Shown here: positions 20,595-63,861 of the stretch, piece after piece | Layout: each line of letters begins with the position of its first letter | How positions within the stretch are numbered: the stretch's first letter is position 1 | Assembly: GCA_002269645.1 (NCBI GenBank) | Contig: NIVC01002660.1 | Span: 87,744-151,743 of the forward strand | Origin: Macrostomum lignano | Lineage: Eukaryota | DNA: 64,000 nt | Direction of reading: 5' to 3' | Program-made: the position numbers and the translations under genes | The notes under the pieces: model-generated | Seen by the model: the letters and a program-made list of their open reading frames with translations, nothing else | Told to the model about the DNA's origin: nothing | The model's database searches: none

Positions 20595-23500
20595 TCAATC
20601 CAACTCAGTCTCGGCCTTAGCCACCCAGGCCGCAATACTCTGCCTCGATGTCAGAAGCTGCTTAAATCCCCGAGGCAAACACTTGCACGCAGTCAAGTTG
20701 AGTTTAGTTAGCGAGCCGGAGGACGAAGCGATCAACCTGCGCAAGGTGTGGTTTAAGGCGACTGTTATTCTCATGGACATTCTTTGAGAAACAAAGATTC
20801 TCATGGACATTTCTTGAGGAAGAAGATTCTCATGGACATTTCTTGAGGAAGAAGATTTTCATGGACATTTCTTGAAGAAGATTCCCATGGACATTTCTTG
20901 AGGAAGAAGATTCCCATGGACATTTCTTGAGGAAGAAGATTCTCATGGACATTTCTTGAAGAAGATTCCCATGGACATTTCTTGAGGAAGAAGATTCCCA
21001 CGGACATTTCTTGAAGAAGAAGATTCTCATGGACATTCTTTGAGAAACAAAGATTCTCATGGACATTTCTTGAGGAAGAAGATTCTCATGGACATTTCTT
21101 GAGGAAGAAGATTTTCATGGACATTTCTTGAAGAAGATTCCCATGGACATTTCTTGAGGAAGAAGATTCCCATGGACATTTCTTGAGGAAGAAGATTTTC
21201 ATGGACATTTCTTGAGGAAGAAGATTTTCATGGACATTTCTTGAGGAAGAAGATTCTCATGGACATTTCTTGAGGAAGAAGATTTTCATGGACATTTCTT
21301 GAAGAAGATTCCCATGGACATTTCTTGAGGAAGAAGATTCCCATGGACATTTCTTGAGGAAGAAGATTCTCATGGACATTTCTTGAAGAAGATTCCCATG
21401 GACATTTCTTGAGGAAGAAGATTCCCACGGACATTTCTTGAAGAAGAAGATTCTTATGGACATTTCTTGAGAAACAAAGATTCCCATGGACATTTCTTGA
21501 GGAAGAAGATTCCCATGGACATTTCTTGAGGAAGAAGATTCCCATGGACACTTCTTGGGGAAGAAGATTCCCATGGACATTTCTTGGGGAAGAAGATTCC
21601 CATGAACATTTCTTGAGGAAGAAGATTCTCATGGGCATTTTTGAGAAAGAAGATTTTCATGGAACATTTATTGAGGAAGAAGATTCTTATGGACATTTAT
21701 TGAGGAAGAAGATTCTTATGGACATTTCTTGAGGAAGAAGATTCTTATGGACATTTCTTGAGGAAGAAGATTCTCATGGGCATTCTTGAGAAAGAAGATT
21801 TTCATGGACATTTATTGAGGAAGAAGATTCTCATGGACATTTATTGAGGAAGAAGATTCTTATGGACATTTCTTGAGGAAGAAGATTCTTATGGACATTT
21901 ATTGAGGAAGAAGATTCTCATGGACATTTATTGAGGAAGAAGATTCTTATGGACATTTCTTGAGGAAGAAGATTCTTATGGACATTTCTTGAGGAAGAAG
22001 ATTCTCATGGGCATTCTTGAGAAAGAAGATTTTCATGGACATTTATTGAGGAAGAAGATTCTCATGGACATTGCAATTAATGCTGCAAATCTAGAATGGG
22101 GTGGCTAGACTAAAGCCTAAATTAAGAATGAGCAGCAAACAAGCATGCATGAGGAAATGCATTCACACCTGACAGCTGGCAGCAGGACCCCTGTCCCAGT
22201 GAGATTAAGCTCGTTAAGGCTGGGCAGCGAAGCCAGAGCCGCCGCAAGCCGGTCGCCACCGCCGGGCAAGCTGAAAATCGAACTGGCAGTGAAATCAGCT
22301 TCATCAAGCAGAGGCAGCTGGCCAGACTCCATTAGCAACAATAGCGGAGCCAGCGTGTCAGCTTCATCAGCATTAGTGCAATGAGATACTGCAAGACGTC
22401 GTAGGCCTTTAAATCCTTGAATCGATGATTTTTCACCGGTGTCATCGACTTCGGCTTGCAAAGCCGACGACAAATCGTCCACTAGATCGAAGTCGGTGGC
22501 CACGATGCTCAGGCTGGAGAGACTGGGCAGAGCAGCTGAGCTCACAGTGAGGCGGAATGGGCTGGGCAACTCCTGAGGATAATTGAGTTCGATTGATAAT
22601 CTCGATCAGAATTTCGATTGGGGATCTGGCTCATTACAGATTGGGGATCTGGCTAATTACAGATTGGGGATCTGGCTCATTACAGATTGGGGATCTGGCT
22701 CATTACAGATTGGGGATCTGGCTCATTACAGATTGGGGATCTGGCTCAATACAGATTGGGGATCTGGCTCATTACAGATTGGGGATCTGGCTCATTACAG
22801 ATTGGGGATCTAGCTCATTACAGATTGGGGATCTAGCTCATTACAGATTGGGGATCTGGCTAATTACAGATTGGGGATCTCGCTCAATACAGATTGGGGA
22901 TCTGGCTCATTACAGATTGGGGATCTGGCTCAATACAGATTGGGAATCTGGCTCATTACAGATTGGGGATCTGGCTCATTACAGATTGGGGATCTGGCTC
23001 ATTACAGATTGGGGATCTGGCTCATTACAGATTGGGGATCTGGCTAATTACAGATTGGGATCTGGCTCAATACAGATTGGGGATCTGGCTCATTACAGAT
23101 TGGGGATCTGGCTCAATACAGATTGGGATCTGGCTCAATACAGATTGGGGATCTGGCTCAATACAGATTGGGATCTGGCTCATTACAGATTGGGGATCTG
23201 GCTCATTACAGATTGGGGATCTGGCTCAATACAGATTGGGATCTGGCTCAATACAGATTGGGGATCTGGCTCAATACAGATTGGGGATCTGGCTCATCTG
23301 GACTATACCAACACACCTGCACCAAGAGATGCCGTAACTGACTCAGCCGACAGTCGGGCCACACAAACGGCAGTCCGCCAGCCAGCGGCAGATTCGCTAA
23401 TTCAAGCTGACGCAAATTCGGTGCACTGGCCGCCAGAGCGGAGACGTCCAGGGCGGAGTCTCGCAGGCTGCTGGAGCGCAAGTTGGCGAGTCGCAGACGA

Positions 23501-30604: not shown

Positions 30605-33600
30605 ATGCCACTACTTCACTTGCCAGTAGTGCACAAGTTTGGGATTATATCCCATAGTCGCCGACTTGAACTACAAGAAAGACTGCTTCAGGCGGCTCTA
30701 CACGATGGCAAAGAGAAGGAAGGATTTCAATCGAAGAAGTAAAAGCCCAGTTTATCCTCAACACTAAAATAGGACTTAATCAAGACTATTAATTCACTAA
30801 TCCACTTTTTTTCTCAACCAATCTGTCAGGAATCCGTTCGAGGTCACCGACGCTTTTATTAAAAAGTATAATTCTGCCCAGTCGGCCACTGAGAAGGCCG
30901 CGTGCGAGGCCGAGGCTCAGCGCCTGCTGGCTCGAGTCCGTCGCCGGGCGGGACTTCGCGACGGCGGCGTCGGGCAGCACGTAAACTTGCCTTTCGCTTG
31001 GACTGAACTGGTCTTTCTGTCCCACTGTCGGGGCCGCGTGCATCAGGGTGCGCATGCACTTTGCTTCAGTACACATGTACTTTATTGTTAACTATATGCT
31101 AGTGTTACCAAAACTTCCATAAGTTAGATTTATTACGTTATTTATTTATTATTAGATTAGATTTTATTATTAGATTTAAGACAAAAGAATACGCAGATCG
31201 AGAGGCGGTCATGGAGGGACAGTGGACAGCTAATCGCGCCCTTATTCTCAGATCAGATGCTCATTCTCAGAGATCTTCATTCTCAGAAATCCTCATTCTC
31301 AGTTCAGATTCCTCATTTTCAGATCTGATCCTCATTCCCAGAGATTCCCATTCTCAGAGATCCTCATTCTCAGAGATCCTCATTCTCAGAGATCCTCATT
31401 CTCAGATCAGATGCTCATTCTCAGATATCCTCATTCTCAGATCAGATTCCTCATTCTCAGATCAGATCCTCATTCCCAGAGATCCCCATTCTCAGATCAG
31501 ATCCCCATTCTCAGAAATCCTCATTCTCAGAAATCCTCATTCTCAGAAATCCTCATTCTCAGATCAGATCTCCATTCTCAGATCAGATCTCCATTCTCAG
31601 ATCAGATCTCCATTCTCTGATCAGATGTTCATCCTCAGATCAGATCTCCATTCTCAGAAATCCCCATTCTCAGATCAGATCTCCATTCTCAGATCAAATC
31701 CCCATTCTCTGATCAGATGTTCATCCTCAGAGAACCTCATTCTGCCATTTCACAGACGCTCTAGACACGCTGGTGATCTCGCTGGAGCAGGCTCCCGTAG
31801 GCTACTACCAGATTCCAGCCCTGTTCTACATCGCCGAGACTGTGCTCTACTGGCTCCAGTCTGAGTCGCCAGCCTCTGACGCACTCCGAAGCGCCGAAGT
31901 GAAGAGTCTCCGCGTCGGGCAGGCGACCTTCCTGCGCCTGTTCTACCACCACATGACCGGCCAGCTCAGGAGGCACACCGAGAGCCGCTCCCGCCTGGCC
32001 CTCTACCTGAAGGATTTCTCCCAGCTGGCGCACCTGTACGCCGCCTATCCCGACGTCGCCTTCTGTCACAGCTTCATCGTTGCTGTCGGCAAAGTGATCG
32101 CCGGTCAGGTTAGCGACGACGATAAGAAAGTCGATGAAACTGATGAAGCGGCGGAGGCTGAGCCTGGTGCTGGCGGGCCGGCGGCTTCATCAGAACTGCG
32201 GTCGCTGGTGACTGCCGAGGTGCACGAGCTCAGCCCGCTGCTATGGCACGCTCTGGACGTCTGGCGATGCGCCAGACACCTCGGCGGAGATCTTGAAGGA
32301 GCTCTAGACGGCCTGCTTGAGTGCAGCGTCGGGATGGCGCAGCAGGGCAACTGGTGAGCTGACTAACTGACTGACTGACTGACTGACTGACTGACTGACT
32401 GACTCACTGACTGACTGACTCACTGACTGACTGACTGATTGACTGACTTTAAAAGTACATCTGAAAGTAAATGCAAAAAGTACATTGTCCACTCAGGATT
32501 GACACCTACCTGGCTTTGCTAATTGTTGGGAACGCAGCTTGCGAAGACGTCGAGTGCCTGAAGGCGTTTCAAGAGCTCGGCGCCGACCGCGAGATAGTTA
32601 TCAACGAGAACAATCAGTTTGGTGAGCAAAGCCGCCCTCTAACAGTCAGTGCATTCTGACAGAATCCTTCCTTCATCGAGCCAGACAATTTTGAACCATT
32701 CCAGACTCGGAGCAGCGCCGAGACTCGAAGACCACCGCGGCCACGACCGCTGACAGTCGCCGTAGCACCACCGGAGCCCCAGTGGAAACCGAGGAGGACG
32801 CCAGCGTTGCCACGACAACATTTCCTGCATTAAGTAACCGTAGCAACGCTGCCGCCGGAGAGCTGCGGGAGGACTCCGCAGCCAGCGAGCCGCTAATCCA
32901 GCGTCGAGCCGCCGGTCGATACGCCGTCGGCATGGCAACCTGGCCCTGGGAGCTCGCCGTTGGCTTTGTGCACCAACTGACCCACGTCTGCCTGGACGGC
33001 CAGTCGAGCTCCGGGCGACAGCTGGCGCTGACTGGCGACCCGGCCTGCTCGCTGACCGCCCTGGCACTGCGGAGCATCGACACGGATCATGACGCCGCGG
33101 CTGAGGACACCTGCTGGCAAATTCGCTACCTGGCGCTGCAGGGACTCGACATTGTTGCCAAGGTGACCGGCGCCGCTGGGATATCAGACCCGATCCCCCC
33201 AAATCCCTCACTGCTGTCTCAGACCCGATCCCCCCAAATCCCTCACTGCTGTCTCAGACCCGATCCCCCCAATCCCTCACTGCTATCTCAGACCCGATCC
33301 CCCCAAATCCCTCACTGCTATCTCAGACCCGATCCCCCCTAATCCCTCACTGTTATCTCAGACCCGATTCCCCCAAATCCCTCACTGCTGTCTCAGACCC
33401 GATCCCCCCAATCCCTCACTGCTATCTCAGACCCGATCCCCCCAAATCCCTCACTGCTATCTCAGACCCGATCCCCCCTAATCCCTCACTGTTATCTCAG
33501 ACCCGATTCCCCCAAATCCCTCACTGCTATCTCAGACCCGATCCCCCCAAATCCCTCACTGCTATCTCAGACCCGATCCCCCCTAATCCCTCACTGTTAT

Positions 33601-36600
33601 CTCAGACCCGATTCCCCCAAATCCCTCACTGCTATCTCAGACCCGATCCCCCCAATCCCTCACTGCTATCTCAGACCCGATCCCCCCTAATCCCTCACTG
33701 CTATCTCAGACCCGATCCCCCCTAATCCCTCACTGCTATCTCAGACCCGATTCCCCCAAATCCCTCACTGCTATCTCAGACCCGATCCCCCCAATCCCTC
33801 ACTGCTATCTCAGACCCGATCCCCCCTAATCACTCACTGCTATCTCAGACCCGATCCCCCCTAATCCCTCACTGTTATCTCAGACCCGATCCCCCCTAAT
33901 CACTCACTGGGGTCTCAGATTCAACCTACGGCAGGTGAAGCCTGAAACCTGTACAAAAAACAACTGCTTCCACAGTCGGCCGTCAAAGACGACCTTCGCC
34001 GCTGCCTGAGCGAGGCGGCCTGGCCGGTGCTGGAGCAGTGCCAGCGGCGGGAGCGCATCGCCCAGGTGCTCGACGGCCTGCCATTGGCCGCAGTCTGGTG
34101 CGGCCTCGTCCAACTCGCCGCCTCGGAGACCGCGTCAAACTCGAAGTCTGGCAGAAGCGGCGGAGTCGGCGGCGGCGGCGGCGGCCTCATCGGTCACGTG
34201 GCGTACGCGCTGACGCTGATCTACCTTCCCACTCTGCCTCCGCCGGTGCCTCTGCAGCCAGCTGCTGCCGCCCAGCAACAGCAGTCTGGCACCGTCGGGA
34301 AGCCGCTGGCGCCGAATGGCGCCAATCGACCGGCGCCAACTCCAGCGGTGCCAGGTGCAGCGCCGGGCGGTAGGCGCCAACGGACCAGCCTTCGTCAGGA
34401 AATCGCGCTGTCAGCCGCTAACGCCAAACCAGCTGTGGGATTTTCTGTTCGGAGAGGATTCGAACTGCGGCGAGTGGTTGAGGATCAGGTGGGTACTGAT
34501 TCTTTGTTCTCATTGAGTCATTGTCCCCATTGAGTCTTTGTAGTCATCGAGTCTTTGTCCTCATTGAGTCTTTGTCCTCATGGTGTCTTTGTCCTCATTG
34601 AGTCTTTGTCCTCATGGTGTCTTTGTCCTCATTGAGTCTTTTCCTTCACTGTGTCTTTGTACTCATTGTCTTCATCCTGAGACAGCTTTCATCTTTAAGC
34701 ATTCTTTGTCCTGATCTGGTATTTTTCCTCTATTAAAATAGGGGCACTATTAAAGTTCTGAGCCTTAATATGAAAGAGAGGAGATATGGGCAAAGTGAGA
34801 TCAGCTTTTCTCAACATAGTCTCCCCCAACCAAGATGCACTTATGGCATCTTGATCGCAGCGCCTCAATGCCACTCTGGAAGAATTGCACCGAGCAGCCC
34901 TCAAACCAAGCAGTTGCAGCATCCTTCAGCGCATCATCAGTGTCAAATCGCTGTCCACGGAGCGCCCGCTTGAAATGTGGAAACAGGTGGAAGTCGCTCG
35001 GGGCCAGGTCTGGTGAATAGGCTGGGTGCGGCAGCTCTCGAAACCCTGCGACACTGACAGCAGCCTTGGCAATCCTGCTAGTGTGAGCCGGTGCATTGTC
35101 GTGCAGCAGCACAACACCTCGGCTCAGCATCCCTCGCCTATTTTCCTTGATTGCCTCGCGCAGACGGGCGATCAGGTCAGCGTAGTAGGCACCTGTGACT
35201 GTCTGCTTGTGCGGTAGAAAGTCCAGCAGCAGCGGGCCCTTGGCATCCCAGAAGACGGTGAGCATAATCTTGCCCGCACTGCATGCAGTCCGTGCCTTCA
35301 GTGGTGCAGGTGAACCAACTGGCAGCCACTGCTTGGACTCCTGCTTGGACTCGGGATCGTGGTGATGGATCCACGTCTCATCCCCGGTCACGCAGCAGGA
35401 CAGAAAGTTGGCAGGGTCCGGATCGTAGGAGTCCAGGACAAGCTTTGAGAACTGCACCCATGCGGTCTTTTGGTCCCTTGTCAAGATTCGTGGGATCCAT
35501 CTGGCAGAAACCTTGGACAGATGAAGATGCTGGTGCAGGATCTCAATGACTTGCGGGTCAGAGAGTCCAGTGTCTGCCGCAAGTTCCCTGACTTTCACCC
35601 GCTGGTCACTGTCAACCAGAGCCTGGATGCGCTGGATGTTGTCGGCAGTGACAGCAGTCCGGGGTCGTCCACATCGGGGGTCATCTTCGAGCGAGTCGCG
35701 GCCACGCTTGAACTCGGCTGCCCAGCGCTTTATGGTGGCGTATGAGGGGGCAGCGTCAGCGTACACACTAGCCATGCGGCTTTGAATTGATGTGTTCCTT
35801 ATTACCCGACTTTTGGTAATCAAAGAACACTCACTTCTAGCTCAGTAGCTAGGCAACCCAGTACGTCAACAGAAGGTATTCAATTACCTTGAGTCCTTAA
35901 TTGAGAGCTCTCGTTAATACTCCTTGTTCGTGGATCTCGCTATCAGTAGCGTCTGTCCTTCAGGAATTCCGGGCGCCGGTCAACAGTTGATCTGGTCCGC
36001 TCTTGCAATTGTCTCCTTGACTTCTTGCCGGCCGGTAATCTGTAGTTCGGACCAATCGGAAGCTTCCAAGTTAACAATGGGGATCCCTGCGCCAAACTGC
36101 GGTTTAATATAAGCCTACTCCTTCTAGCAGTGCCTCTCTGCACTCTAGGTATAGCTCCGGAAACCACTGATAGTCTTCTAAGACCTATCAGGGGCAGTCC
36201 TTCTGGAGACTGCAACCAGTGGAGTCTAAACAGACTCAAGAGTCTCAGCAGACTCAAATAAACTCAAGTCTCAATAGACTTGAGCGAGACGTCTCAACCA
36301 ACGGGCGCAAATGAGTAAGGCTTACCGCAAGAACTCGTCCACGACGCGAGTTTCTTCAGGAAGGCTTCACTAGAGCTTCCTCTTCGGAGCTTCTCTCTCT
36401 TGGAGATTCTGTGGCTCCGGGTCCGTTCCGGACCACTTGTATTTATAGGCGTTCAGACCTCTCTCGAGGTCGTACATCACTGTCTTCGCAAATGTCAAAG
36501 GGTCACGATTCGGTGGCTGTCAAGCATGACAGGGTAGAAAGTTGCGCAACTAGTCTACTGTAAAAGCGCATGATTGGTTACCGTAGCTGGTAGACTTTGA

Positions 36601-37389
36601 TTGGTTCATCCGGGTGCAACCCGAGTGCAAACCAAATGATGACTTGAAGGTGGGGTTTGAATTGACAGTTGTTGGTCGCACGTGATTGGGTGATTTCTAA
36701 AATTAGCATGCTCAAGGTCTCTTTCTTTCTATTGGTTAGTCAGAATATACTTATAATTCAAAGCATACCTTTATTCATGCTCTTCAACTTACTACTGAAT
36801 AAAATGTGTGAGTAGTACGTTAACACTTTTATGTCTTCTTACGGGAGGTAGAACACTCTACAGAATTTCAGCAGGCTTTGAGCCCTCCAGAGTCAGAAAT
36901 TTAATCACTGCCCTGTGCTCAAGCTTCAATTCTTGAGAAAATGCCATGGGGTGCTGGAAATAAAATGGTGCAGTGGGACTTAGGGAATGCAGAAAATTCT
37001 GAAAAGTTGACAATAGACTATTAACATGTGGCGCTTTTAGAGCCTAAAGTTTCAACACTTTGCCACTATAAGATCTTGGTCAGGCTCAGAACTTTAATAG
37101 TGCCCCTGTATAAGTCTTTGTCTTCACGGAGCCTTTGTTGTCCTAAATTATGTGTCTCAATTGAGTCTTTGGCCCCTTTAACTCATTGTCCTCATTGAAT
37201 AGCTCTGTCCTCACTGAGTCTTTATCTGAAGACAGTCTGTCCCTCAACCAAGTGTGAAAAAATTTCCACAATTTCTCCAAACTGCAGTGGCGCAAGCAAG
37301 CGCAAAGTCAGCTTGAGTTCGAGAACGCAACTCGAGACGAGCAGCTCCGAAGGAAAGCCGCAGAAGCCGCCGCGACCGCCGCTGATTAA
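30605..37389 (+). CDS. TMEM232: Transmembrane protein 232 homolog (7 exons)
   Basis: Exons 30605-30738, 30830-31047, 31756-32353, 32497-32621, 32705-33162, 33976-34488 and 37288-37389, all phases compatible. Blocks FEVTDAFIKKYN..GQHVNLPFAWTELVFLSHCRG, IPALFYIAETVLY, FLRLF, LLWHALDVW, WIDTYLALLIVGNAA, WPWELA and ELRRVVEDQ|WRKQ parallel human TMEM232 as recalled. Confidence 0.88.
31245..31742. repeat. Composite CATTCTCAGA(T/G)-based minisatellite in TMEM232 intron 2
   Basis: Tandem variants of TCCTCATTCTCAGATCAGA running up to the acceptor. Confidence 0.92.
32358..32447. repeat. (ACTG)n microsatellite in TMEM232 intron 3
   Basis: Direct observation. Confidence 0.95.
33184..33918. repeat. ~35-bp minisatellite (CTCAGACCCGATCCCCCCAAATCCCTCACTGCTAT)n in TMEM232 intron 5
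   Basis: About 21 tandem copies. Confidence 0.96.
34500..34680. repeat. 17-bp minisatellite (CATTGAGTCTTTGTCCT)n at the start of TMEM232 intron 6; it resumes at ~37115-37225 after the mariner
   Basis: The same unit is present on both sides of the mariner element. Confidence 0.85.
34740..37107 (-). mobile_element. Mariner (DD34D) DNA transposon, ~2.37 kb, with perfect 26-bp TIRs
   Basis: AGGGGCACTATTAAAGTTCTGAGCCT at 34740-34765 and its exact reverse complement at 37082-37107, followed by GTA. It lies inside TMEM232 intron 6, antisense to the host gene. Confidence 0.9.
34801..35823 (-). CDS. Mariner transposase; catalytic domain uninterrupted, N-terminus apparently shortened
   Basis: WIPR (the WVPH equivalent), TGDETW, LHDNAPAH and HPAYSPDLAPSDFHLF give a D,D(34)D triad. 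The track ORF starts at a TTG, and the first ATG is at MASVY, so part of the first HTH seems lost. Confidence 0.9.
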   Translation of the reverse strand: MITKSRVIRNTSIQSRMASVYADAAPSYATIKRWAAEFKRGRDSLEDDPRCGRPRTAVTADNIQRIQALVDSDQRVKVRELAADTGLSDPQVIEILHQHLHLSKVSARWIPRILTRDQKTAWVQFSKLVLDSYDPDPANFLSCCVTGDETWIHHHDPESKQESKQWLPVGSPAPLKARTACSAGKIMLTVFWDAKGPLLLDFLPHKQTVTGAYYADLIARLREAIKENRRGMLSRGVVLLHDNAPAHTSRIAKAAVSVAGFRELPHPAYSPDLAPSDFHLFPHFKRALRGQRFDTDDALKDAATAWFEGCSVQFFQSGIEALRSRCHKCILVGGDYVEKS

Positions 37390-38239
37390 CAAACAATTCC
37401 GTTAATGTAATAATTTTATAAGAGATCTCTTCTATCACGAGTACAAATTTGTTAATTTTTTACCTCGCGTTTAAATTTAATTGAATAATATTATAACAAA
37501 GATTCACTTTGTAAAAACGTAGCGAAAACGTATCTTGAAAATTCTATAGCTAAAATTTCTTTTTAATTACAATTAAATTTAATAAATTCTTAAGCAATCA
37601 ATTAAACAATGTTAATCACTGTGGAAAAGCAAAATTTATTCAATTTAAAATAGTCAAGGACAAACGTAAGACACATCATTGATGTTTCTTGTGTGTTTTA
37701 AATAATCGTTATATATTACTCGTAATTAATCGAAATAATTTAATTGGGCTGATAAAATTGTTAAATTAAAACTCAATCGCGCAAAGAAAATTAATTCAAA
37801 GTAAAAAAATACTATAATAGCTAGCGCATGTTTGGGGACAGTATTTTATGTTAGGATTAGTAAAATAACTTAGTATAAGCATTCCATACACAATCAGTTT
37901 TATACTAGCAATTAGTGCCCCCCGTTGGGGAGCCAACAAAGAATGGAATACAAACTTTTGAATAAACTGTGTGTCTGACATGACGCTTCTTTTATAACAA
38001 TAAAGTATTAACATAAAAGAACAATAATATTAAGTTTGGACAATGGACATCAATCATCAGAGCTCATTAAATCTATTAAACGAAATAAGAAATTGCTCTT
38101 ATATATATATTGATTTGAGTACAAAGCTGTGTACACAATTTTGGGTGGAAAGGCGTGGCATGTATCAAATCAGTCTCATCCGGTTTTTGAGCGAGCCAAA
38201 AAAGTTAAAGCTGACGGCTAGCACCCCATGGCTAGCTGA

Positions 38240-39890: not shown

Positions 39891-40800
39891 GTCTGTGGGT
39901 CCTTCATGCTTCGGAGCTTGCATCTTCTTCAAGGGAGAAGTGGTGTGGAGCTACTCCCAGCACACTGGACTCAACTTCCGTGTTTTTCAGAGCGAGGTGC
40001 TTGCCATCAGCTCCTGTGCGGCAGAGCTGCGCCGGGGGCAGCTCAGCGGTCGGAAATGTAATTTTCACTCTGACAGCCAAGCAGCCCCTCGGGCCCTCTG
40101 CCGCAGCACCACCAGCTCCAGATTTGTCCTGGACTGCTACGCCCTAGCTCAACGGGTTTGTGCTAGGCAACCAGGTGGAGCTCAGATGGATCCCGGGTCA
40201 TGCTGGATCCTCGGCAGCGAGCACACTGACCTGCTGGCTAAGGCAGGCTCCGCCGGCGCTGCTGGGGCCGGGCCCGGGAGCCCCCACCCCCGTTCGGTGA
40301 TCAACTCCCGCCTTAAGCGCTGGGCTGATTCCGAGCATCTCCGCAGGTCGCGCGGAACCTGGAATTGCAGGCAATCCCGTGCTGCCGTCCCCTATCCCTC
40401 CCCCCTCCTGCGTAGAGCCCTCCTCAGGATCAACTGCAGAGATCTCAGAGCAGTTAGCATGGCCCTCTCCGGGCATGGCTGCTTCTCTCGCCACCGCTTC
40501 CTTCAGGGCCAGGTACCCGAGGAGCGGTGCCCCTTCTGCTGCTCAGGCAGTGAAAACGCCGAGCACTTTATCTGCCACTGCCCGGTTTTTACCAGGGCCA
40601 GGCCAAGGACCACTAGGAACACTAGTCTAGTAGTCCTTGGGCCAGGCTCACTCACCTTGGGCCAAACCCCGTTCTCCGACGTTTGCAGGCCCGAGACAGG
40701 GAATCCTATTGGCTCGCTGCGCTCCCCAAGAAGCGACACTGGGCTAGGAAGGGGTGTACAAGGTTAGTCTCAACACCTCTCTCAAACCACTCATTCTGCC
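39890..40800 (+). mobile_element. 5'-truncated non-LTR retrotransposon (I/LOA/R1-type): RNase H plus CCHC knuckle
   Basis: RVFQSEVLAI, FHSDSQAA, (W)IPGH.G..GSE.TDLLAK.GS after a frameshift, ALSGHG and CPFC..SENAEHFICHCPVFTRAR. Confidence 0.88.
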
Positions 40801-41876: not shown

Positions 41877-42814
41877 CTTTGATAACAGTTGTTTTGGCAT
41901 TATTTGAAGAATATGTTTTTAAAGTTACAGTTTTGAGCGTTTTTGAGTGTAACAGAGATTTTGAATTTTAGCAGGGTCTGTTTTTCCCTCTGGGTTTGCT
42001 ATCATATACTTTTAGGCATGAATGGGAAACAAAGCGACGACTGCACAGGATAAAAAAGTCAGACTTTTCAACTGGACTCGTTCAAATGAATCCTTTTCTT
42101 CTTCCCACACAGCTCGAAAAACGAGACTAACCTTGTACAACGGAGGGTGGGGCAGGGTGAGTGTCGCTTCCTGGGGAAGCGGTCGAAGCAACCAAAGAGG
42201 ATTCCTTGTCCGAGAGCACACCACTGCTCGCCCGGTACCTCAGGGACACGGGACAAGCTGATTTCTTCCCCACCGCCAGTGAGGAGGACCGCGCTGCAGG
42301 CGAGACCGACGGGTATCCCTGAGCGACATCGCTTCAATGGAAGTCATTGGTCTCCAGGGGCTAGCGGAATGTGCGGTCTCCTCCGCCTCCTCGCTGCATC
42401 CGCCGGACGCCCCCTGCAGCAAAGTCAAGGAAGTCAGACGTCTTTTAGCTGTTCATTTCCAAGTTGCAAGTCATAGCAGATGCATGTAAAAAGCTGGACA
42501 CTCGTAGAGTAGCCAGTAAATGTAAACGCGTCTGACTCTCGCACTGCCTGCAGCCCCTATATGGTTCGTAGTTCAATTCCGTGAATTACAGTGTACATGT
42601 AACTTGGGGGCTTGTGCACAAAATCACTGTCTAGATCTGCAAAACATGGCCGGGTTTGTCATGTAAATCACACAACACAAAGCCAAAGTCAAAGCTCAAG
42701 GCAAATCGATCGAATTTCAGTAGGCAAAGACCATTCGGCCTCTCAAAAACAGTACTAAAAATAGCTCGTACGGTTGGTGCCCACCTTTTGCAGCTGCTTC
42801 AGCATCCCTGCTGC

Positions 42815-43084
42815 CGCCCTCGAAAACACGGCTCTAGCAAAATATCCTAGCTACGCTCCCAATTCTGAGTCTTCCACTAAGACTGCTGAAAAATGCAATT
42901 TTACCTTCCATTATTGATGCAAAAGCATCGATTTCATGTTGTGCAGAGTAGAAGCAATCGAGGATCCGACTTCGGTACAGTTAAAAGCCCAAATTGCTAG
43001 CTGAAAGCTTTTTTGATACAGATGATGGATTAAAAATTCATTATGGATGGATAAGGGGGGGGGAGCCACTCAAACCTAAAATTG
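42815..43084. repeat. Dispersed repeat Y, left part (homologous to 52345-52610)
   Basis: CTGCCGCCCTCGAA..GCAAAAGCATCGA..GGATCCGACTTC..GTTAAAAGCCC..AAAAATTCATTATG..GAGCCACTCAAACC aligns by eye at roughly 75-80% identity. Confidence 0.85.
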
Positions 43085-43089
43085 TATAA

Positions 43090-44166
43090 ATGTGTGCTCA
43101 AATTTCGGCGCAGCAAAAGCAATTTACCTGCACAAAACCTGGCATGCCACTTCAAGCTCTGACTGCCGCTCTGCTGCTCCTGCAGCTGCAGGCGCTCGCC
43201 ACCGCCAAAACTCTCAACATTCTCCACACCGACTGCCTCGACCAGTCTCGCGGCAGCGACTCCTCCGCCACGTCGTTCATCGACTGCGTGGCGACCAGCC
43301 GCACCAACGACATGGGCGGCCTTGCCGTGGCGCAGTGGAACGACCGCGACAACACCTGCTGGCTGTACAACTACCAGCGAGTCTGCCAGCAGCTCATGGG
43401 TGCCGGTCAATATGAGCAACCCACCCCGACCAGCTGCAGGACGGTCCTCGGCACCAAGTATGACGCGATCTCGGCCAGCCGACTGTTCTTATTTTTCTGG
43501 GTTGGAGACGCCGGTACTGGAAGGATGGAAAGCCTGGCTTGCATGCCGGGCGGAACCGATGCAACCATAATGTCAACTGGAGTCACCTGGACCAGCGAGG
43601 GACCTCGTCTGTACGGTTCAAACAACTCTAGGCTGTGGTCCTCTCCGGTACCGTTGCTCCACCTTACACATACTGTGTCGTTTGGGATTCGCTTGAAAAG
43701 AAGGCCGAAGAACAATATCTTTCTTGAACTGACTGACTGCGCCACTTTCAAGGTGATGGGCATGAATATCCTCGAGAAGAACTACCTGGCCCCGACTTCG
43801 TCACCTAACGGAGCTCTGTTTGCCAACTTGGGTCCGTTCGCCAGGTCCTACACCGGTGAGTCCGCCCTGCCAGATGATGACAGTCAGTTCTTCACGCTGG
43901 GATTGGCTATCAACCGGTCAAGTATTTTTGACGACCCAAGCGATTACGATTACAAATACTTCGTGGACTACACCGTGGTGCCGCATAACATTTTGTCTAC
44001 TACTCACTGGCTCAATGCAAACACCAGCTACTGCCTGGCCATCGGCTGGAGCGGCAGCACCGGAGGGCCGATAGATTTTCTCGACGGCGTCGTCGCAGCC
44101 GTGGGCGTCTCGGCCAACAAGCTGGACAGCGCCGACTTACGTCTGGTTTTCGACCGCACCGGCTAA
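43090..44166 (+). CDS. Intronless secreted protein: signal peptide, PAN/apple-like Cys domain and a ConA/LamG-like beta-sandwich
   Basis: Uninterrupted 358-codon ORF, with a likely start at ATG 43144 (MPLQALTAALLLLQLQALATA is a signal peptide). C..C..WN..TCWLY is PAN-like. The C-terminal SFGIRLK..FTLGLAI..YFVD..LAIGW..FLDGVVAAVGV pattern is LamG-like. Domain names are pattern-based. Confidence 0.8.
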   Translation: MCAQISAQQKQFTCTKPGMPLQALTAALLLLQLQALATAKTLNILHTDCLDQSRGSDSSATSFIDCVATSRTNDMGGLAVAQWNDRDNTCWLYNYQRVCQQLMGAGQYEQPTPTSCRTVLGTKYDAISASRLFLFFWVGDAGTGRMESLACMPGGTDATIMSTGVTWTSEGPRLYGSNNSRLWSSPVPLLHLTHTVSFGIRLKRRPKNNIFLELTDCATFKVMGMNILEKNYLAPTSSPNGALFANLGPFARSYTGESALPDDDSQFFTLGLAINRSSIFDDPSDYDYKYFVDYTVVPHNILSTTHWLNANTSYCLAIGWSGSTGGPIDFLDGVVAAVGVSANKLDSADLRLVFDRTG

Positions 44167-44416
44167 CGACGTGAACGGATTTATGCGGCTCCGCGATTGC
44201 CATCTTTTTGTTTCCTAGCGGATGCGTTGACATTCTTTGACTTGACTGGCAAAATATCGATTTTGTATTGGCTCGATTTTGGACTAAATATATTGGAGAA
44301 GGCGCTGGGACCGTCCCTGAACATCTTTTGATTGAATCCGATGCTTTTTCTATCAGTTATTTTTTTAGAACAAGGAACCTGTGCTTTTCTGATCGATTCA
44401 TGTCACTCTGTCGAGG

Positions 44417-44530
44417 ATTGGGAGGGAAATCTACGGATCCAAACCATAGCTGAGGTTTTTATGTCATTCGGGTCATTTTCAGACAACTGTCAACATCCCG
44501 CTGTCTCTAGCAATATGGCGTGAAAATCCT
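44417..44530. repeat. Dispersed repeat Y, right part (continues homology to 52610-52745)
   Basis: ATTGGG(A/T)GGG.AAATC..GGATCC..CTGAGGTTTT.ATGTCATTCGGGTC.TTTTCAG..GC.ATATGGC is shared. Confidence 0.8.
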
Positions 44531-44621
44531 GCTTAAATTTCGAAAAGTATAGTAAAAATTTAGACCCTGGTTATTTAAGAATGTGCAGTTTTGTGATAAA
44601 GTGCGTGCGCATTAGGTTTTT

Positions 44622-44806
44622 TAGAGTCAGGGGCTGTGTAAACGACATTGTAAACGTCTTTGTCACACAACCGGCGAGAGACATTAGTGAGAGGCATTAC
44701 TACCCATTCCGCCGACTCCTTTGAGCAGGCACACGAGCGCGCGGATACATACGCAGTCATACGTGCAGGAATACGCACACAGGAGTGTACAGCGGCCTGA
44801 ACTCTA
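44622..44806. mobile_element. Short MITE-like repeat, copy 2 of 3
   Basis: Homologous to 17081-17218 and 53401-53572. Ends are TAGAGTCAGG and CCTGAACTCTA (imperfect inverted). Confidence 0.7.
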
Positions 44807-44951
44807 TAGTTAGGCATGTACACTTTACTGTGCCTTGGTGGCGATAAATGCTAGAAAAATCTAAAAAAAACTGAGAGACACATGAGAGACAGAAACAACT
44901 GCAAGGTTGCTTTCTTGTCGGTCTCCTGTAGCATTTGAAGCTCGACGATAA

Positions 44952-45472
44952 TGATGTTAGACAGGTAGTTGACGAACGCATCTCGATAGCGGGTGACGTT
45001 GGCCGGTACGTCAGCGATGGTGAATACGAGCTGCTGGTCCAAGCTGAGCAGGTAGATCGTGCAGGACGCTTTGGCTGAGTACTTGGAATCGGATGCGGTC
45101 ACATTGAAGTAGAGCGAGCCCGCCATGCTGTCTTGGAAGTAGGTTCGCTCCCCTGTCTTGAGCACGCCAGTTCGATTGTCTAACGCGAACACGTTCGCGT
45201 AGATGCCGCGCTCCTCCAGCTGTAAAGTCAGCTGGCTGGTGCTGGCCAGCACTGGGGTGATGCTGAATGTCAGCGCGCTGTTGTTGCCAGCGTCCAAGTC
45301 GGTGACGAACTCGGCGAAGCTGAACACTGTTGCCAGGTCGATCATTGACGTTAACGCCGCCGTAGTATTTTGGTGAGCTCCACACCGGCGGGTTGTCGTT
45401 GTCGTCGGCAACGTTGACAACCACCTGCGCCATGATCGGGTTGGACGCGTCGAATGACACCGGAGTGTCGTC
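44952..45472 (-). pseudogene. Truncated, frameshifted copy of cadherin exon 54403-55048
   Basis: About 98% identical to 54473-54995. A 2-nt deletion near 45330 shifts the frame, both ends are truncated, and there are no splice sites. Confidence 0.9.
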
Positions 45473-46289: not shown

Positions 46290-46735
46290 GTCGTTTTAAT
46301 AATATGGCCGTTTTAACAATACTGTCGTCTCGTCTTAAAAATACTGTACTTTTACGGTTGTAATGATACGGTCGTTTTAATAATACTCATTTTAATATTC
46401 ATGTTCTAATAATAGGGTTTTTTAAATAATACTAGTTTTAATTATACTGTCGTTTTAATAACCGTCGTTTTACCAATGGCGTTTCAAAATTACTGTCGTA
46501 TAAGTTAATAACAGTCATTTTAATAATAATTTCCTTTTAACAATCTGATTGTTTTAATAATACTGTCGTTTTAATAATACTGCCGTTTTAATAATACTGT
46601 TATTTTAGTATTAATGTCGTCCTAAGTATAATGTAGTTTTAAAATAATGGTCGTTTAAACAATACGGTCGTTTCAATAATACAGCTCTTTTAATAATATT
46701 GTCGTTTTAATAATACCGTCGTTCTAATATTAATC
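46290..46735. repeat. Degenerate AT-rich minisatellite (AATACTGTCGTTTTAAT)n
   Basis: Repeated GTCGTTTTAATAATAC variants. Confidence 0.85.
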
Positions 46736-48777
46736 AACCGGTCAATCAGCTGTGAATTAAGAAGTAGCGGAATTGAATTTGCGGAATGGAAATTTCAACC
46801 AGAAAAATGATATGCCCCAGGCTCTTTCTATCCCACTTGACAAAATTGGTTGGCAATTGTTAGAACTGATTGAAATTTTGTAGAAAGTGTATGCAATGTG
46901 TCGATTCTGAATCGCAGTTTGTCTTAATTGGTTGAAACGGATGTGTCACGTTTTGAGTCGTAGTCCCCAAAGAAGGATGAGTTGAACGATTGGCGGTGTA
47001 GCAGTTTGTGTAGCGGTAGCACTGATTAATAGACCGTTGGTTAAATTCGTTGTGGTCTTGGCTTTTATATTTTTCTAAAAAAGTAATAGAATTACAGAGG
47101 ATATAACAATATGGGCACTGGCGGCTGCAACAATGAGTTTATGCTTAGATGAGTAGGCGACGGCGGATGGCGATGAGGCAATAACGGTGAGCAGCGGTCG
47201 TGAGTAGCCAGAAGTGGCGGAGAGTGGCGCTAGCCGTAGTAGAAGTACAAGTGGAATACGGTGTGTAACAGGCTGGCCCAGACAGAGGAGCCGTGGCGAG
47301 AGATAAGGAGGTTCGAGGCAGCCAGGAGAGAGAGAAGGAAAACAAGAGCCGCGAAGTGAGGAGGCCCCAGCCCGCCGCCAGGCGGGGGTTAATAAAGAGC
47401 GCAAAAGGGGGTAGCATAAAACACGGAGAGTTTTCATTGGCTGGCGAGAGAATTTGAAATTATCGATCGTGCTAAAATTTACAGACGAACGCAAGGCCTA
47501 CCAAATACACAGTGAATTAGCAATTGATACAGATTATTTGCACGCTACTACAAGTAAACGTTAAAATAAACTATTGGAGAAATTTAAATGAGAAATTGCA
47601 AGGGAAACTACAGTCCAACGGCCCTTTTGCGGGACCACCTTAAACTAGCAACGTCACAGATGCCTCACTTGATGGAATAGGTTGGCAGTTGTTGGAACTG
47701 ATCGACTGTTAGTTGGAAATGTATGCAAACTGTTGAATCTGTATCGTAGTTTGTTGAAACTGGAGGGAACCTGAAACTTTCACAACCAAAAAGTGTCGAA
47801 ATCGGATGCCAGAAAGTTAAAATTGGTTGCAGCTAGTACAAAACTGAAAGTGAGAAGGTGTAGACCAGTCAATGGCACACGAACCTGCGGATATTCCGCG
47901 TGTCGAGTCGACACCGTCGATTTCTTTGCCGCGTCAGCGCACTCGTCCTTACAGGTGGTGACCAACAGACGAGCTGGTGTCGCTTAGCGATCGGCTCAAT
48001 TGTCTTGGCTATGCACATCGTCTTCTATATCGGGTGCCGTCGGCCAGTCGCGGCAAAATCTGCAATCCGATGGTTTTATCGACAACGACGACGATGTGCA
48101 TCTGCAGAGCCAGTGTCAACGAAATCAGGCGCCAGCTGAACGGTATAAACGATCGCCGACGACGTGGGTATATCGTCAAAAACCGAACCACTGGAACCTC
48201 ATATCGTGACTACGCAACATCCGATTCCCTGCCAACGAACAGCAGCAGGTACACTGTGACCAGTTTTCCAATCAACAAGTGCCATCCGAGCATCTGCAAC
48301 AACAACAGCAGCAGTTGCCGCCTCGCCTGTCCAAATTACAGCCAATGCATGACCAGCCGCCGCAGTACCGGCAGCAGCATCAATCGCAACAACCGTCGCA
48401 GCCACAATCGCGCCCTCGGCGTGCTCTGCAGCAGCAGGGCCATTTGCCCTCGGTGCGAGACCAGTCGTACGGAGCGATTTTTATTGGTCTGCGCAACCGG
48501 CTCCCCGCGCAAATGTCGGACCTTCTGCAGTTGGCAATGCAATCTATGGCGCTGCCGCCGTCAATCTAGCACAATTACGTCGTACAGGCTGCTCTAGCTT
48601 CTGGGCAGGGCGCAGTCGCCGATACTGCCTCTACCATACCGCGACCTGTTCGGAGATCCGCTCCAACTGTCCAACTGCGCATTCTGGCTATTTTAGTCCT
48701 TGTTGCTAACCAACGAGTAAATCCTGAGTTTAAATTTTAAAAACGGCATCCCTAATTGTCGTAGGCTTTCTAGGAAC

Positions 48778-49150
48778 CAAAAACAACTGCTTCCACAGTC
48801 GGCCGTCAAAGACGACCTTCGCCGCTGCCTGAGCGAGGCGGCCTGGCCGGTGCTAGAGCAGTGCCAGCGGCGGGAGCGCATCGCCCAGGTGCTCGACGGC
48901 CTGCCATTGGCCGCAGTCTGGTGCGGCCTCGTTCAACTCGCCGCCTCGGAGACCGCGTCAAACTCGAAGTCTGGCAGAAGCGGCGGAGTCGGCGGCGGCG
49001 GCGGCGGCCTCATCGGTCACGTGGCGTACGCGCTGACGCTGATCTACCTGCCCACTCTGCCTCCGCCGGTGCCTCTGCAACCAGCTGCTGCCGCCCAGCA
49101 ACAGCAGTCTGGCACCGTCGGGAAGCCGGCACAATCAGGTGGGCATTGAG
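48778..49150 (+). pseudogene. Orphan copy of TMEM232 exon 6 with an internal 3' deletion
   Basis: Near-identical to 33957-34310, including the acceptor CTTCCACAG. It then jumps to ..CAGGTGGG (a donor now out of phase), and the ORF stops at 49149. Confidence 0.88.
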
Positions 49151-49189
49151 TCTTTGTTCTCAACCAGTCTTTATACTTAATGAAATAAT

Positions 49190-49480
49190 GTCAATCACTG
49201 TGCAAAGGCAAAACCAATTCGAATTAAAAAGTCAAGGCCAAACGTAAGAAACAGAATTGAGATTATTTTGTGTTTGTAACAACCGTTATCATTTGAATTA
49301 TTTAACAAAAATGTATCGTGCTTATAAAATTGTTCACGTAAAATTCATTCGCGTAATGAAAATTAATTGAAAGTAATAAATACTTTTATAGCTCGCGCAT
49401 GTTTGGTGACACAATGTTTTATGTTAGGATTAGTAAAATATAACTTTGTATAAGCATTCCATACAAATCAGTTTTATATT
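49190..49480. repeat. AT-rich dispersed repeat X, homologous to 37610-37905
   Basis: Shared AATCACTGTG..AGTCAAGG.CAAACGTAAG..GCGCATGTTTGG.GACA..TTTTATGTTAGGATTAGTAAAATA..TATAAGCATTCCATACA. Confidence 0.8.

Positions 49481-50041: not shown

Positions 50042-63861
<13,820 letters not shown>

What the first reader, a model, noticed from the sequence alone, without database searches (positions are those of the whole stretch)
42815..44530. Intronless secreted PAN+LamG-like gene inserted in the middle of a dispersed repeat (captured cargo gene)
Seen: repeat Y is continuous at 52345-52745 (..GAGCCACTCAAACCCAAATTGGGTGGGTAAATC..). Here the same sequence breaks after ..CAAACCTAAAATTG (43084) and resumes at ATTGGGAGGGAAATC (44417), so ~1.33 kb flanked by a possible ATTG duplication is extra. 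That segment is almost entirely one intact 358-codon ORF with a signal peptide, starting within ~60 bp of the breakpoint, with no introns or poly-A, in a region where every other ORF is broken. Inference: a host-type extracellular lectin/adhesion gene was mobilised, by retroposition or as cargo of a larger element of which Y is the empty or deleted form, and is recent or selected. This could be a TE-driven route for amplifying secreted protein families, and is the best candidate in the window for a new system.
Basis: partly seen in the sequence, partly recalled or inferred. Interest (0 to 1): 0.72.

Follow-up and report, generated by a model that had tools for sequence, protein, structure and literature searches.

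The report
Flatworm lectin-like gene in duplicated intron
The finding is a real, intact, intronless gene for a secreted lectin-fold protein found only in macrostomid flatworms; it lies in one copy of a local duplication of a cadherin intron, with nothing to show that a mobile element carried it there.

Summary
Repeat Y is split at 43084/44417 by 1,332 extra bases with ATTG on both sides. Almost all of the extra segment is one intact gene.

- **Not a dispersed repeat.** Y has two copies in the window. They are the first blocks of a collinear local duplication, 42775-45472 matching 52307-54995. That duplication copies the last intron and part of an exon of a minus-strand cadherin gene.
- **No mobile-element hallmarks.** The extra segment has no terminal inverted or long terminal repeats, no poly-A and no transposase. 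It begins with a TATA-like motif, which argues against a retrocopy. A mariner in the same window has perfect 26-nt inverted repeats.
- **A real gene.** The product is 341 aa with a signal peptide and host-like codon usage. Its only relatives are about ten Macrostomum lignano proteins and three short environmental contigs, at 24-31% identity with conserved cysteines.
- **Fold.** The C-terminal half is a concanavalin-A-like (LamG-type) beta-sandwich. The PAN assignment found no support.

Most likely this is a resident nested gene that copy B lost by a microhomology deletion. Insertion into copy A cannot be excluded without the whole genome. The finding is ordinary to modestly interesting.

The parts
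42775..43084 (.). Y-left, copy A: first block of the local duplication; matches 52307-52614 in the cadherin intron
   Evidence: 76-78% identity, E 1e-39 to 9e-57
43081..43084 (.). ATTG at the left edge of the indel; it recurs at 44417-44420 and occurs once in copy B
   Evidence: Read directly. No longer direct repeat at the indel ends: 914 of 5,000 shuffles score as well
43085..44416 (+). Extra 1,332-bp segment, present in copy A and absent from copy B: a complete small gene unit
   Evidence: no inverted repeats at its ends
43085..43092 (+). TATAAATG, a TATA-box-like motif forming the first bases of the extra segment, 56 bp upstream of the likely start codon
   Evidence: Read directly; its function is inferred
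43141..44166 (+). Coding sequence, 341 aa plus stop, single exon
   Evidence: ORF list. Homology to relatives runs in one frame across 43219-44154. phmmer best hit E 7e-22. GC3 0.72 and RSCU r = 0.82 with resident exons
43141..43203 (+). Predicted signal peptide MPLQALTAALLLLQLQALATA
   Evidence: Hydrophobic N-terminus shared by all full-length relatives. The cleavage site is inferred by eye; no predictor was run
43210..43452 (+). N-terminal cysteine-rich alpha/beta domain (residues 24-104; conserved C32, C49, C73, C82, C99)
   Evidence: Alignments A4 and A6. Block-mean pLDDT 73-85 over residues 31-80. No PAN or other family match
43468..44163 (+). C-terminal concanavalin-A-like (LamG_3-type) beta-sandwich domain
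   Evidence: Foldseek against PDB: lectin-type jelly rolls, E 2e-5 to 1e-3. A relative hits Pfam Laminin_G_3 over the whole profile, E 5.8e-4, below the curated cut-off
44167..44416 (+). 250 bp downstream of the stop codon, still within the extra segment (presumed 3' UTR); no AATAAA/ATTAAA and no A-run
44417..44567 (.). Y-right, copy A; matches 52611-52781
   Evidence: 68-82% identity
44620..44807 (.). Block Z, copy A; matches 53396-53576 in the cadherin intron
   Evidence: 72-84% identity
44952..45472 (-). Fragment of a cadherin exon, copy A; 98.3% identical to 54473-54995, sharply bounded, with a 2-bp deletion that shifts the frame
52307..52781 (.). Y, copy B, uninterrupted; lies in the last intron of the minus-strand cadherin gene
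   Evidence: GTAAGT donor at about 54403-54398. Transmembrane exon ORF at 51681-52169; the intron's acceptor site was not pinned down
54473..54995 (-). Parent cadherin exon segment, copy B, part of the intact exon ORF 54399-54983
   Evidence: The cadherin's best hit is a Macrostomum lignano cadherin at 58% identity

Best explanation
The segment holds an ordinary resident gene, not a mobilised one.

**The product (shown).** The gene encodes a secreted 341-aa protein. It has a signal peptide, a small domain with five conserved cysteines, and a concanavalin-A-like (LamG_3-type) beta-sandwich. It belongs to a small, fast-evolving family seen so far only in macrostomid flatworms.

**The gene unit (partly inferred).** It is a compact single-exon unit with a TATA-like motif 56 bp upstream of the ATG and about 250 bp of 3' flank. 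The role of the motif is inferred.

**Its position (shown).** It lies on the plus strand inside copy A of an old local duplication that is about 22-28% diverged. Copy A is the derived, partial copy. It reproduces most of the last intron and part of the preceding exon of the neighbouring minus-strand cadherin gene. 'Repeat Y' is simply that intronic DNA.

**The indel (inferred).** The 1,332-bp difference between the copies is a simple indel bounded by 4 bp of identity (ATTG). The most likely history is that the gene sat antisense in the cadherin intron before the duplication. The duplication then made two copies, and the redundant copy in B was removed by a microhomology-mediated deletion. The 98% identical exon fragment next to it is a later gene-conversion patch, or a second copying event.

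**Function (inferred).** The protein most plausibly acts as an extracellular carbohydrate- or ligand-binding (lectin-like) factor.
For: - **Real gene.** None of 20,000 shuffles is stop-free. Eight homologues were found among 1.8 billion representatives, the best at E 7e-22.
- **Conserved positions kept.** The window protein has the consensus residue at every invariant and nearly invariant column of A4: C32, C49, C73, C82, C99, C134, W120, D123, W150, E153, G154, G159, S163, K186, R187.
- **Restricted family.** Relatives are Macrostomum lignano proteins and three short JGI contigs, two of which carry full-length intact ORFs.
- **Host organism.** The neighbouring cadherin's best hit is a M. lignano cadherin at 58% identity, against 32% for the next hit.
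- **Host-like coding.** GC3 is 0.72 and RSCU correlates at r = 0.82 with the resident exons.
- **Fold.** AlphaFold2 with the family alignment gives pTM 0.53. Foldseek returns lectin-type jelly rolls at E 2e-5 to 1e-3. One relative matches Laminin_G_3 over profile positions 1-151.
- **Local duplication.** Collinear blocks lie in the same order and orientation, ending in a cadherin exon fragment. Y has only two copies in the window. There are no other cadherin pseudo-exons near copy A, so A is the partial, derived copy.
- **No mobile-element hallmarks** around the segment, whereas the window's mariner shows perfect 26-nt inverted repeats.
- **Prior, from general knowledge rather than a test here.** Loss of one redundant copy after a duplication, through a deletion at short microhomology, is a common outcome.
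Against: - The direction of the indel is not determined. A 4-bp flanking identity is equally what a 4-bp target duplication or a microhomology-joined insertion would leave.
- The left breakpoint falls exactly at the TATA-like motif, so the extra segment looks like a self-contained gene cassette. That is slightly more natural for an insertion.
- No remnant of the gene survives in copy B.
- Genome-wide copy numbers of Y and of the gene are unknown, because the source genome could not be searched.
- The structure model is only moderate (mean pLDDT 58.7). The window protein itself has no Pfam hit.
Confidence: 0.58

Rival explanations
1. DNA-level insertion into copy A. After the local duplication, a complete gene unit (TATA motif to 3' flank) was copied from a paralogue elsewhere. 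It was joined into a break in copy A by end-joining, templated repair or ectopic conversion, using or duplicating ATTG.
For: - The extra segment begins exactly with TATAAATG and ends about 250 bp after the stop, so it is a self-contained unit.
- The same neighbourhood contains sharply bounded, 98-99% identical copied patches of 350-520 bp: 44952-45472 and 48776-49128. Short-patch copying has therefore operated here.
- The family has multiple paralogues in M. lignano.
Against: - No donor copy and no second copy of the gene in the window.
- Insertion of a whole functional gene without a carrier element is rarer than deletion.
- Nothing in the sequence distinguishes this from a deletion in copy B.
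Confidence: 0.25
2. Transposable-element cargo. Y is the deleted or empty form of a mobile element, and the lectin-like gene is its captured cargo, amplified with the element.
For: - ATTG on both sides could be a 4-bp target duplication.
- One M. lignano paralogue (P0003) sits in a gene model fused to a weak reverse-transcriptase match, RVT_1 at E 6.6e-4, below the curated cut-off. Parts of that model also look integrase-like by eye; this was not tested.
Against: - Y's only two copies are collinear with further non-repeat blocks, including a cadherin exon fragment. They are duplicated intron DNA, not independent insertions.
- No inverted or long terminal repeats bound Y or the extra segment, and no transposase is present.
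- By direct reading, the segment starts TATAAA and ends CGAGG, so it lacks Helitron-type ends.
- The positive control shows what a real element looks like here: a mariner with 26-nt inverted repeats.
- The flanks of the relatives' contigs show no similarity to Y.
- The fusion in P0003 is expected by chance in a repeat-rich genome.
Confidence: 0.07
3. Processed retrocopy. An mRNA of an intron-containing parent gene was reverse-transcribed and inserted into Y.
For: The gene is intronless and compact.
Against: - No poly-A tract or A-rich tail, and no AATAAA or ATTAAA near the 3' junction.
- The flanking identity is only 4 bp.
- The segment starts with a TATA-like motif, which lies upstream of a transcription start and would not be in an mRNA.
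- A single exon is not unusual here: the HIT-domain gene at 19115-19624 is also a single ORF.
- Two related environmental contigs also carry uninterrupted full-length ORFs. Whether those contigs are DNA or RNA was not checked.
Confidence: 0.03
4. Assembly artefact. The duplicated blocks or the indel come from mis-joined haplotypes or collapsed repeats rather than from the real chromosome.
For: There are sharply bounded 98-99% identical patches next to blocks of about 80% identity. Relatives of this organism are known to be hard to assemble, as M. lignano is a neopolyploid (PMC10733133, abstract).
Against: - The Y copies are 22% diverged, far too much for haplotypes.
- The gene itself is coherent, and its homology to relatives is continuous in one frame.
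Confidence: 0.03

Closest known systems
Concanavalin A-like lectin/glucanase superfamily, Laminin_G_3 type (Pfam PF13385)
   Same: - The C-terminal ~230 residues are predicted as a beta-sandwich jelly roll.
- Foldseek matches include the lectin-like domain of trypanosomal (trans-)sialidases, CBM40 sialic-acid-binding modules, the Emp46p L-type lectin, PL7 alginate lyases and the lectin-like subdomain of clostridial neurotoxin receptor-binding domains.
- One relative aligns to the full Laminin_G_3 profile.
- The family's C-terminal motif (Dg.V..Vg......s..Ei...F) resembles the usual ending of LamG_3 domains. This last point comes from my own knowledge and is a lead only.
   Different: - The window protein has no Pfam hit at E up to 1, and the relative's hit is below the gathering score.
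- Identity to any solved structure is 7-14%.
- No binding-site residues can be assigned.
- It is fused to a lineage-specific cysteine-rich N-domain and carries an extra conserved cysteine (C134) in the sandwich.
PAN/Apple domains
   Same: The N-domain is a small disulfide-rich alpha/beta module of about 80 residues. It carries a C-x-[LV]-F-x-Y-x3-C motif that recalls the central PAN motif. hhalign does pair that motif with the one in plasminogen.
   Different: - No Pfam PAN family hit in any of 8 members at E up to 10.
- No PDB profile hit.
- hhalign probability is below 1% against the plasminogen and HGF N-domains.
- The cysteine spacing differs, as there is no C-x3-C pair.
Nested antisense genes in introns, and loss of one copy after segmental duplication
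   Same: - The uninterrupted copy of the flanks lies in an intron of a cadherin gene on the opposite strand.
- The two copies differ by a clean indel with 4-bp microhomology, as microhomology-mediated deletions do. The comparison with such deletions rests on established knowledge.
   Different: The gene is now found only in the derived, extragenic copy and not in the intron itself. The nested stage is therefore inferred, not observed.
Gene capture by transposons (Pack-MULEs, Helitrons, cargo-carrying Tc1/mariner or Maverick-type elements)
   Same: A host-type gene lies between two halves of a sequence that exists uninterrupted elsewhere.
   Different: - No terminal repeats, transposase or element-specific ends.
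- Only two copies of the 'carrier', both explained by a local duplication.
- Captures by those elements are usually gene fragments, whereas this is a complete and apparently functional unit.

Membership tests
Concanavalin A-like / Laminin_G_3 (PF13385) | Profile match at or above Pfam's gathering score | tested here: not met
   The window protein has 0 families at E up to 1. The best family member (L003 ORF) scores 20.5 bits against a cut-off of 27.6, E 5.8e-4, though it spans profile positions 1-151 of 151.
Concanavalin A-like / Laminin_G_3 (PF13385) | Two-sheet beta-sandwich jelly-roll fold | tested here: met
   The AlphaFold2 model built with the family alignment (pTM 0.53, pLDDT 58.7) has its strands in residues 99-324. 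All 23 Foldseek PDB hits with E up to 0.001 are jelly-roll lectin-like or related domains. Confidence is moderate because the model is of medium quality.
Concanavalin A-like / Laminin_G_3 (PF13385) | Ligand- or metal-binding site on the concave sheet or loops | not testable with these tools
   The model is too uncertain in the loops (pLDDT below 50 at residues 212-241, 261-266, 281-288 and 306-312).
PAN/Apple domain | Match to a PAN profile (PAN_1 to PAN_4) or to solved PAN domains | tested here: not met
   Pfam scan of 8 N-domains at E up to 10 gave no PAN family. PDB profile search gave 0 hits. hhalign against the plasminogen and HGF N-domains gave probabilities of 0.2% and 0.7%.
PAN/Apple domain | Characteristic fold (helix packed on a curved antiparallel sheet) and disulfide pattern | tested here: inconclusive
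   The predicted order is beta-alpha-beta-beta-alpha, with block-mean pLDDT 73-85 over residues 31-80 and five conserved cysteines. The domain could not be searched on its own, and disulfide pairing is unknown.
Processed retrocopy | 3' poly-A tract | tested here: not met
   No A-run at 44380-44420 and no AATAAA or ATTAAA in 44100-44900.
Processed retrocopy | Copy begins at the transcription start, with no promoter carried along, and is flanked by a 7-20 bp target duplication | tested here: not met
   The segment begins with TATAAATG. The flanking identity is 4 bp, and no longer direct repeat is present (914 of 5,000 shuffles score as well).
Processed retrocopy | Intron-containing parent gene | not testable with these tools
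   The source genome is not in any searchable collection.
DNA transposon, or cargo-carrying element with Y as its ends | Terminal inverted repeats at the ends of the inserted unit or of Y | tested here: not met
   No inverted-repeat pair bounds 43085-44416 or 42775-44567. Positive control: the mariner at 34740-37107 has perfect 26-nt inverted repeats.
DNA transposon, or cargo-carrying element with Y as its ends | Multiple independent (dispersed) copies | tested here: not met
   Within the window there are two copies only, and they are collinear with three further shared blocks. Genome-wide copy number is not testable here.
DNA transposon, or cargo-carrying element with Y as its ends | Target-site duplication | tested here: inconclusive
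   ATTG on both sides is compatible with a 4-bp duplication or with deletion at microhomology.
Local segmental duplication | Several blocks in the same order and orientation, including non-repeat (genic) sequence | tested here: met
   Y-left, Y-right, Z and the cadherin exon fragment lie in the same order on the same strand. Total spans are about 2.70 kb (copy A) and 2.69 kb (copy B).

The most novel reading that the evidence does not exclude
The 1,332-bp unit (TATA motif, single-exon secreted lectin-like gene, short 3' flank) is a self-contained cassette that was moved as DNA into copy A with a 4-bp duplication and without any known transposon termini. In that reading Y, or an unrecognised carrier, spreads members of this flatworm-specific secreted family. 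That would be a new route of gene-family amplification.
Probability: 0.08. Interest if true: 0.65.

Novelty: new member of a known kind. Interest (0 to 1): 0.27.

Why it matters
If the main reading is right, the locus adds an unannotated member to a small family of secreted, cysteine-rich, lectin-fold proteins restricted to macrostomid flatworms. No Pfam model covers this family. The M. lignano entries carry source names such as 'Peptidase S1', 'UBC core' and 'COIA1' that match nothing found in these sequences. That would interest people working on flatworm secretions (adhesion, reproduction, immunity) and on annotation.

The locus also shows that a 'split repeat with a gene inside' can arise from a local duplication followed by an indel. 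It does not, on present evidence, show a new mobile system.

Tried and rejected
- **Single-sequence searches.** The word-indexed search of the ORF found nothing. Only the exhaustive phmmer search found relatives.
- **Family profile in the word-indexed search.** It returned only three M. lignano proteins, because of the candidate cap.
- **Exact-protein look-ups.** Both ORF versions, the HIT-domain gene and two versions of the mariner transposase were all not on record. The source genome could therefore not be reached, and genome-wide copy numbers could not be obtained. The M. lignano protein P0006 was also not on record.
- **Metagenome scan.** The scan with P0005 gave one new relative.
- **Single-sequence AlphaFold2.** Useless, at pLDDT 36.
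- **Whole-protein searches of the PDB by sequence.** The single-sequence search found nothing at E up to 10. The family profile found only flagellin chains at E 0.18, taken as chance.
- **PAN tests.** All negative.
- **Longer direct repeat at the indel ends.** MAFFT seemed to align the inner right end of the segment with the end of Y-left. A shuffle test showed this is not significant: 914 of 5,000 shuffles score as well.
- **Two long terminal repeats of one retroelement.** Rejected, because blocks Z and the exon fragment follow both Y copies.
- **Helitron ends.** Absent by direct reading.
- **LINE-like ORF.** I read ORF 39895-40767 as a possible LINE ORF2 tail by eye, but it has no Pfam hit.
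- **Second copy of the gene or further cadherin pseudo-exons near copy A.** None found.
- **Rfam and tRNA scans.** Nothing found, so Y has no SINE-like origin that these tools can see.
- **Literature.** One search for a named Macrostomum secreted family gave nothing specific.
Full report
**1. Observation**

The sequence at 42500-44800 and at 52100-53000 was read directly and compared with BLASTN.
- The left part of the repeat, 42802-43084, matches 52336-52614 at 77.7% identity (E 1e-39).
- The right part, 44417-44482, matches 52611-52672 at 82% (E 5e-9).
- With more sensitive settings the matches extend to 42775-43080 = 52307-52611 and 44417-44567 = 52611-52781.

Copy A therefore carries 1,332 extra bases (43085-44416). 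ATTG lies at 43081-43084 and again at 44417-44420, and copy B has it once. The ORF 43090-44166 is intact. None of 20,000 shuffles of its sequence is free of stops in frame.

**2. What 'repeat Y' is**

A profile built from both Y copies finds only those two copies in the 64-kb window. They are not isolated. In both places Y is followed, in the same order and orientation, by two further shared blocks:
- Block Z: 44620-44807 = 53396-53576, 72-84% identity.
- A piece of a cadherin exon: 44952-45472 = 54473-54995, 98.3% identity.

Copy B lies inside a large cadherin gene on the minus strand.
- Its exons are 60326-61285, 56511-58256, 55698-56405 and 54399-54983, followed by a transmembrane exon at 51681-52169.
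- Exon 54399-54983 ends in a canonical GTAAGT donor.
- The best database hit of the 581-aa exon is a Macrostomum lignano cadherin at 58% identity. The next hits are at 32%.

Y in copy B is therefore intronic DNA of the last cadherin intron.

Copy A holds only a fragment of the exon, with a 2-bp deletion that shifts the frame. There are no other cadherin pseudo-exons around it. A is thus the derived, partial copy, lying about 6 kb beyond the 3' end of the cadherin gene.

The non-coding blocks are 18-28% diverged, so the duplication is old. The exon patch is 98% identical and sharply bounded, so it is younger. It is either a gene-conversion patch or a second copying event.

A second pair in the window shows the same pattern:
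- 48776-49128 = 33953-34305 at 98.6%.
- Next to it, 49179-49478 = 37600-37904 at 81%.

**3. The extra segment has no mobile-element hallmarks**

- No inverted-repeat pair bounds the segment or Y.
- There is no poly-A run and no AATAAA or ATTAAA near the 3' junction.
- An apparent longer direct repeat at the two ends, suggested by a MAFFT alignment, is not significant. 914 of 5,000 shuffles score as well.
- The first bases of the segment are TATAAATG, a TATA-box-like motif 56 bp upstream of the second ATG (43141). A TATA box lies upstream of the transcription start and would not be part of a retrocopy.
- It also implies that the first ATG (43090), which is part of the motif, is not the start codon. 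The product is then 341 aa, beginning MPLQALTAALLLLQLQALATA.
- As a positive control, the mariner element in the same window has perfect 26-nt terminal inverted repeats at 34740-34765 and 37082-37107. Its transposase is recognised by Pfam at E 3.5e-22.
- A single exon is not special in this window. The HIT-domain gene at 19115-19624 is a complete single ORF.

**4. The gene and its family**

Neither Pfam nor the PDB gives a hit for the protein itself. The word-indexed search also found nothing.

The exhaustive phmmer search of 1.84 billion representatives found eight proteins. Seven are credible relatives, with E from 7e-22 to 3e-4 and 26-43% identity over the matched stretches. The eighth (P0008, E 5e-4) is a highly repetitive protein matched over about 40 residues, and it was not used further.
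- Two further M. lignano members (P0009, P0010) and one further environmental contig, with a full-length intact ORF, were added later.

All full-length members start with a hydrophobic signal-like segment. They share the invariant or nearly invariant residues C32, C49, C73, C82, C99, C134, W120, D123, W150, E153, G154, G159, S163, K186 and R187, in window numbering.

Homology to every relative runs in a single frame across 43219-44154, so there is no intron. There is no second copy or remnant of the gene anywhere in the window, including copy B.

Codon usage matches the resident exons, with GC3 0.72 and RSCU r = 0.82 against 0.14 for a shifted-frame control. This is a host gene of a macrostomid flatworm, though not M. 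lignano itself.

**5. Fold**

The family alignment lifted the AlphaFold2 model from pLDDT 36 to pLDDT 58.7 and pTM 0.53.

*C-terminal half.* Foldseek against the PDB returned 23 hits at E up to 1e-3. All are concanavalin-A-like jelly rolls or close relatives:
- the lectin-like domain of trypanosomal sialidases and trans-sialidases (E 2e-5);
- CBM40 modules;
- the Emp46p L-type lectin;
- PL7 alginate lyases;
- a pilus-tip lectin module;
- the lectin-like subdomain of clostridial neurotoxin binding domains, and NTNH.

One relative (L003) matches Pfam Laminin_G_3 over the whole profile at E 5.8e-4, below the curated cut-off. 'LamG-like' is therefore supported at the level of fold and superfamily, not as membership of a Pfam family.

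*N-terminal domain.* Residues 24-104 are the best-predicted part of the model, with block-mean pLDDT 73-85 over residues 31-80 and the order beta-alpha-beta-beta-alpha.
- It gave no PAN hit in Pfam.
- It gave no hit in a PDB profile search.

The C-x-L-F-x-Y-x3-C motif recalls PAN, but that remains a lead and not a result.

**6. Mechanism**

Shown:
- a real, intact gene for a secreted protein;
- a local duplication whose parent is the cadherin intron;
- a clean 1,332-bp indel with 4 bp of flanking identity;
- no mobile-element features.

Inferred: the direction of the indel. I favour deletion from copy B, at roughly 55-60%. Under this reading the gene was nested antisense in the intron, the duplication produced two copies, and the redundant copy was lost at ATTG microhomology. 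Loss of a redundant duplicate by a short-homology deletion is common, whereas carrier-free insertion of a complete gene is rare.

Insertion into copy A by end-joining, templated repair or ectopic conversion remains possible, at about 25%. It is somewhat favoured by the cassette-like extent of the segment and by the copied patches nearby. The remaining rivals are transposon cargo at about 7%, retroposition at about 3% and assembly error at about 3%.

The protein's function is inferred from the fold only: extracellular binding of carbohydrate or another ligand.

**7. Comparison, novelty and verdict**

The closest known kind is the concanavalin-A-like/LamG_3 superfamily, here fused to an unclassified cysteine-rich domain. 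The family is restricted to one lineage and is not covered by Pfam. The genomic arrangement is an ordinary local duplication with a presence/absence indel.

The case for a new system rests entirely on a genome-wide pattern that could not be examined. The source genome is absent from every searchable collection. I rate it as a new member of a known kind, with interest 0.27. The residual novel reading, a mobile gene cassette, gets a probability of about 0.08.

Noticed in passing
window 34740-37107: A mariner-type element with perfect 26-nt terminal inverted repeats. It has a 340-aa transposase ORF at 34801-35823 (Pfam Transposase_1, E 3.5e-22). A separate short ORF at 36858-37013 reads like the transposase N-terminal helix-turn-helix (...EHRAVIKFLTLEGSKPAEIL), so about 1 kb of extra DNA seems to interrupt the transposase gene. 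The element is 2.37 kb, against about 1.3 kb for typical mariners.
   Followed up: partly
window 48776-49478 vs 33953-37904: A second local duplicate shows the same two-age pattern. 48776-49128 is 98.6% identical to 33953-34305, which lies in an ORF downstream of a TMEM232-like exon. Right next to it, 49179-49478 is 81% identical to 37600-37904. The source copy carries 3.3 kb between the two blocks, including the mariner, that the other copy lacks.
   Followed up: partly
window 44952-45472: In the cadherin exon fragment of copy A, the three substitutions within 44953-45330 are all synonymous (126 aa, 100% identical), and a 2-bp deletion then shifts the frame. This could be a recent conversion patch or weak constraint; the numbers are too small to tell.
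   Followed up: partly
window 9558-10412, 13514-14194, 14941-15831, 22593-23528, 31211-31864: Long minisatellite arrays that stay open in several reading frames at once and so produce spurious ORFs of 190-310 aa. Further arrays lie at 46357-46729 (17-bp unit), 51237-51399 and 52933-53303 (18-bp unit). The last of these accounts for part of the extra length of copy B between Y and Z.
   Followed up: no
window 19115-19624 (-), 31773-32357 (+), 11116-13317 (-): Other genes in the window: a complete single-exon HIT-domain (HINT-like) gene (E 2e-27), a TMEM232-family exon (E 8e-31), and a 733-aa glutamine/proline-rich ORF with no Pfam hit. ORFs 15740-17191 and 17503-18252 look like a folylpolyglutamate-synthase-type gene by eye but gave no Pfam hit.
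   Followed up: partly
L001 1040-1132 and L002 1060-1156: Both environmental contigs that carry family members end in tandem repeats of the last ~20-40 coding bases. L002 also starts with a C-rich low-complexity stretch of about 40 bases, and its reading frame is broken after residue 210. These are probably assembly artefacts of short contigs.
   Followed up: no
UniRef entries P0001, P0004, P0006, P0009, P0010 (Macrostomum lignano): The source names given to these family members ('Peptidase S1', 'UBC core', 'COIA1', 'MAM' and 'DOMON domain-containing') match nothing in the sequences. Pfam found none of those domains in the three members scanned whole, P0001, P0009 and P0010. P0002 and P0003 are long gene models in which the family domain is fused to unrelated or transposon-derived sequence.
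   Followed up: partly
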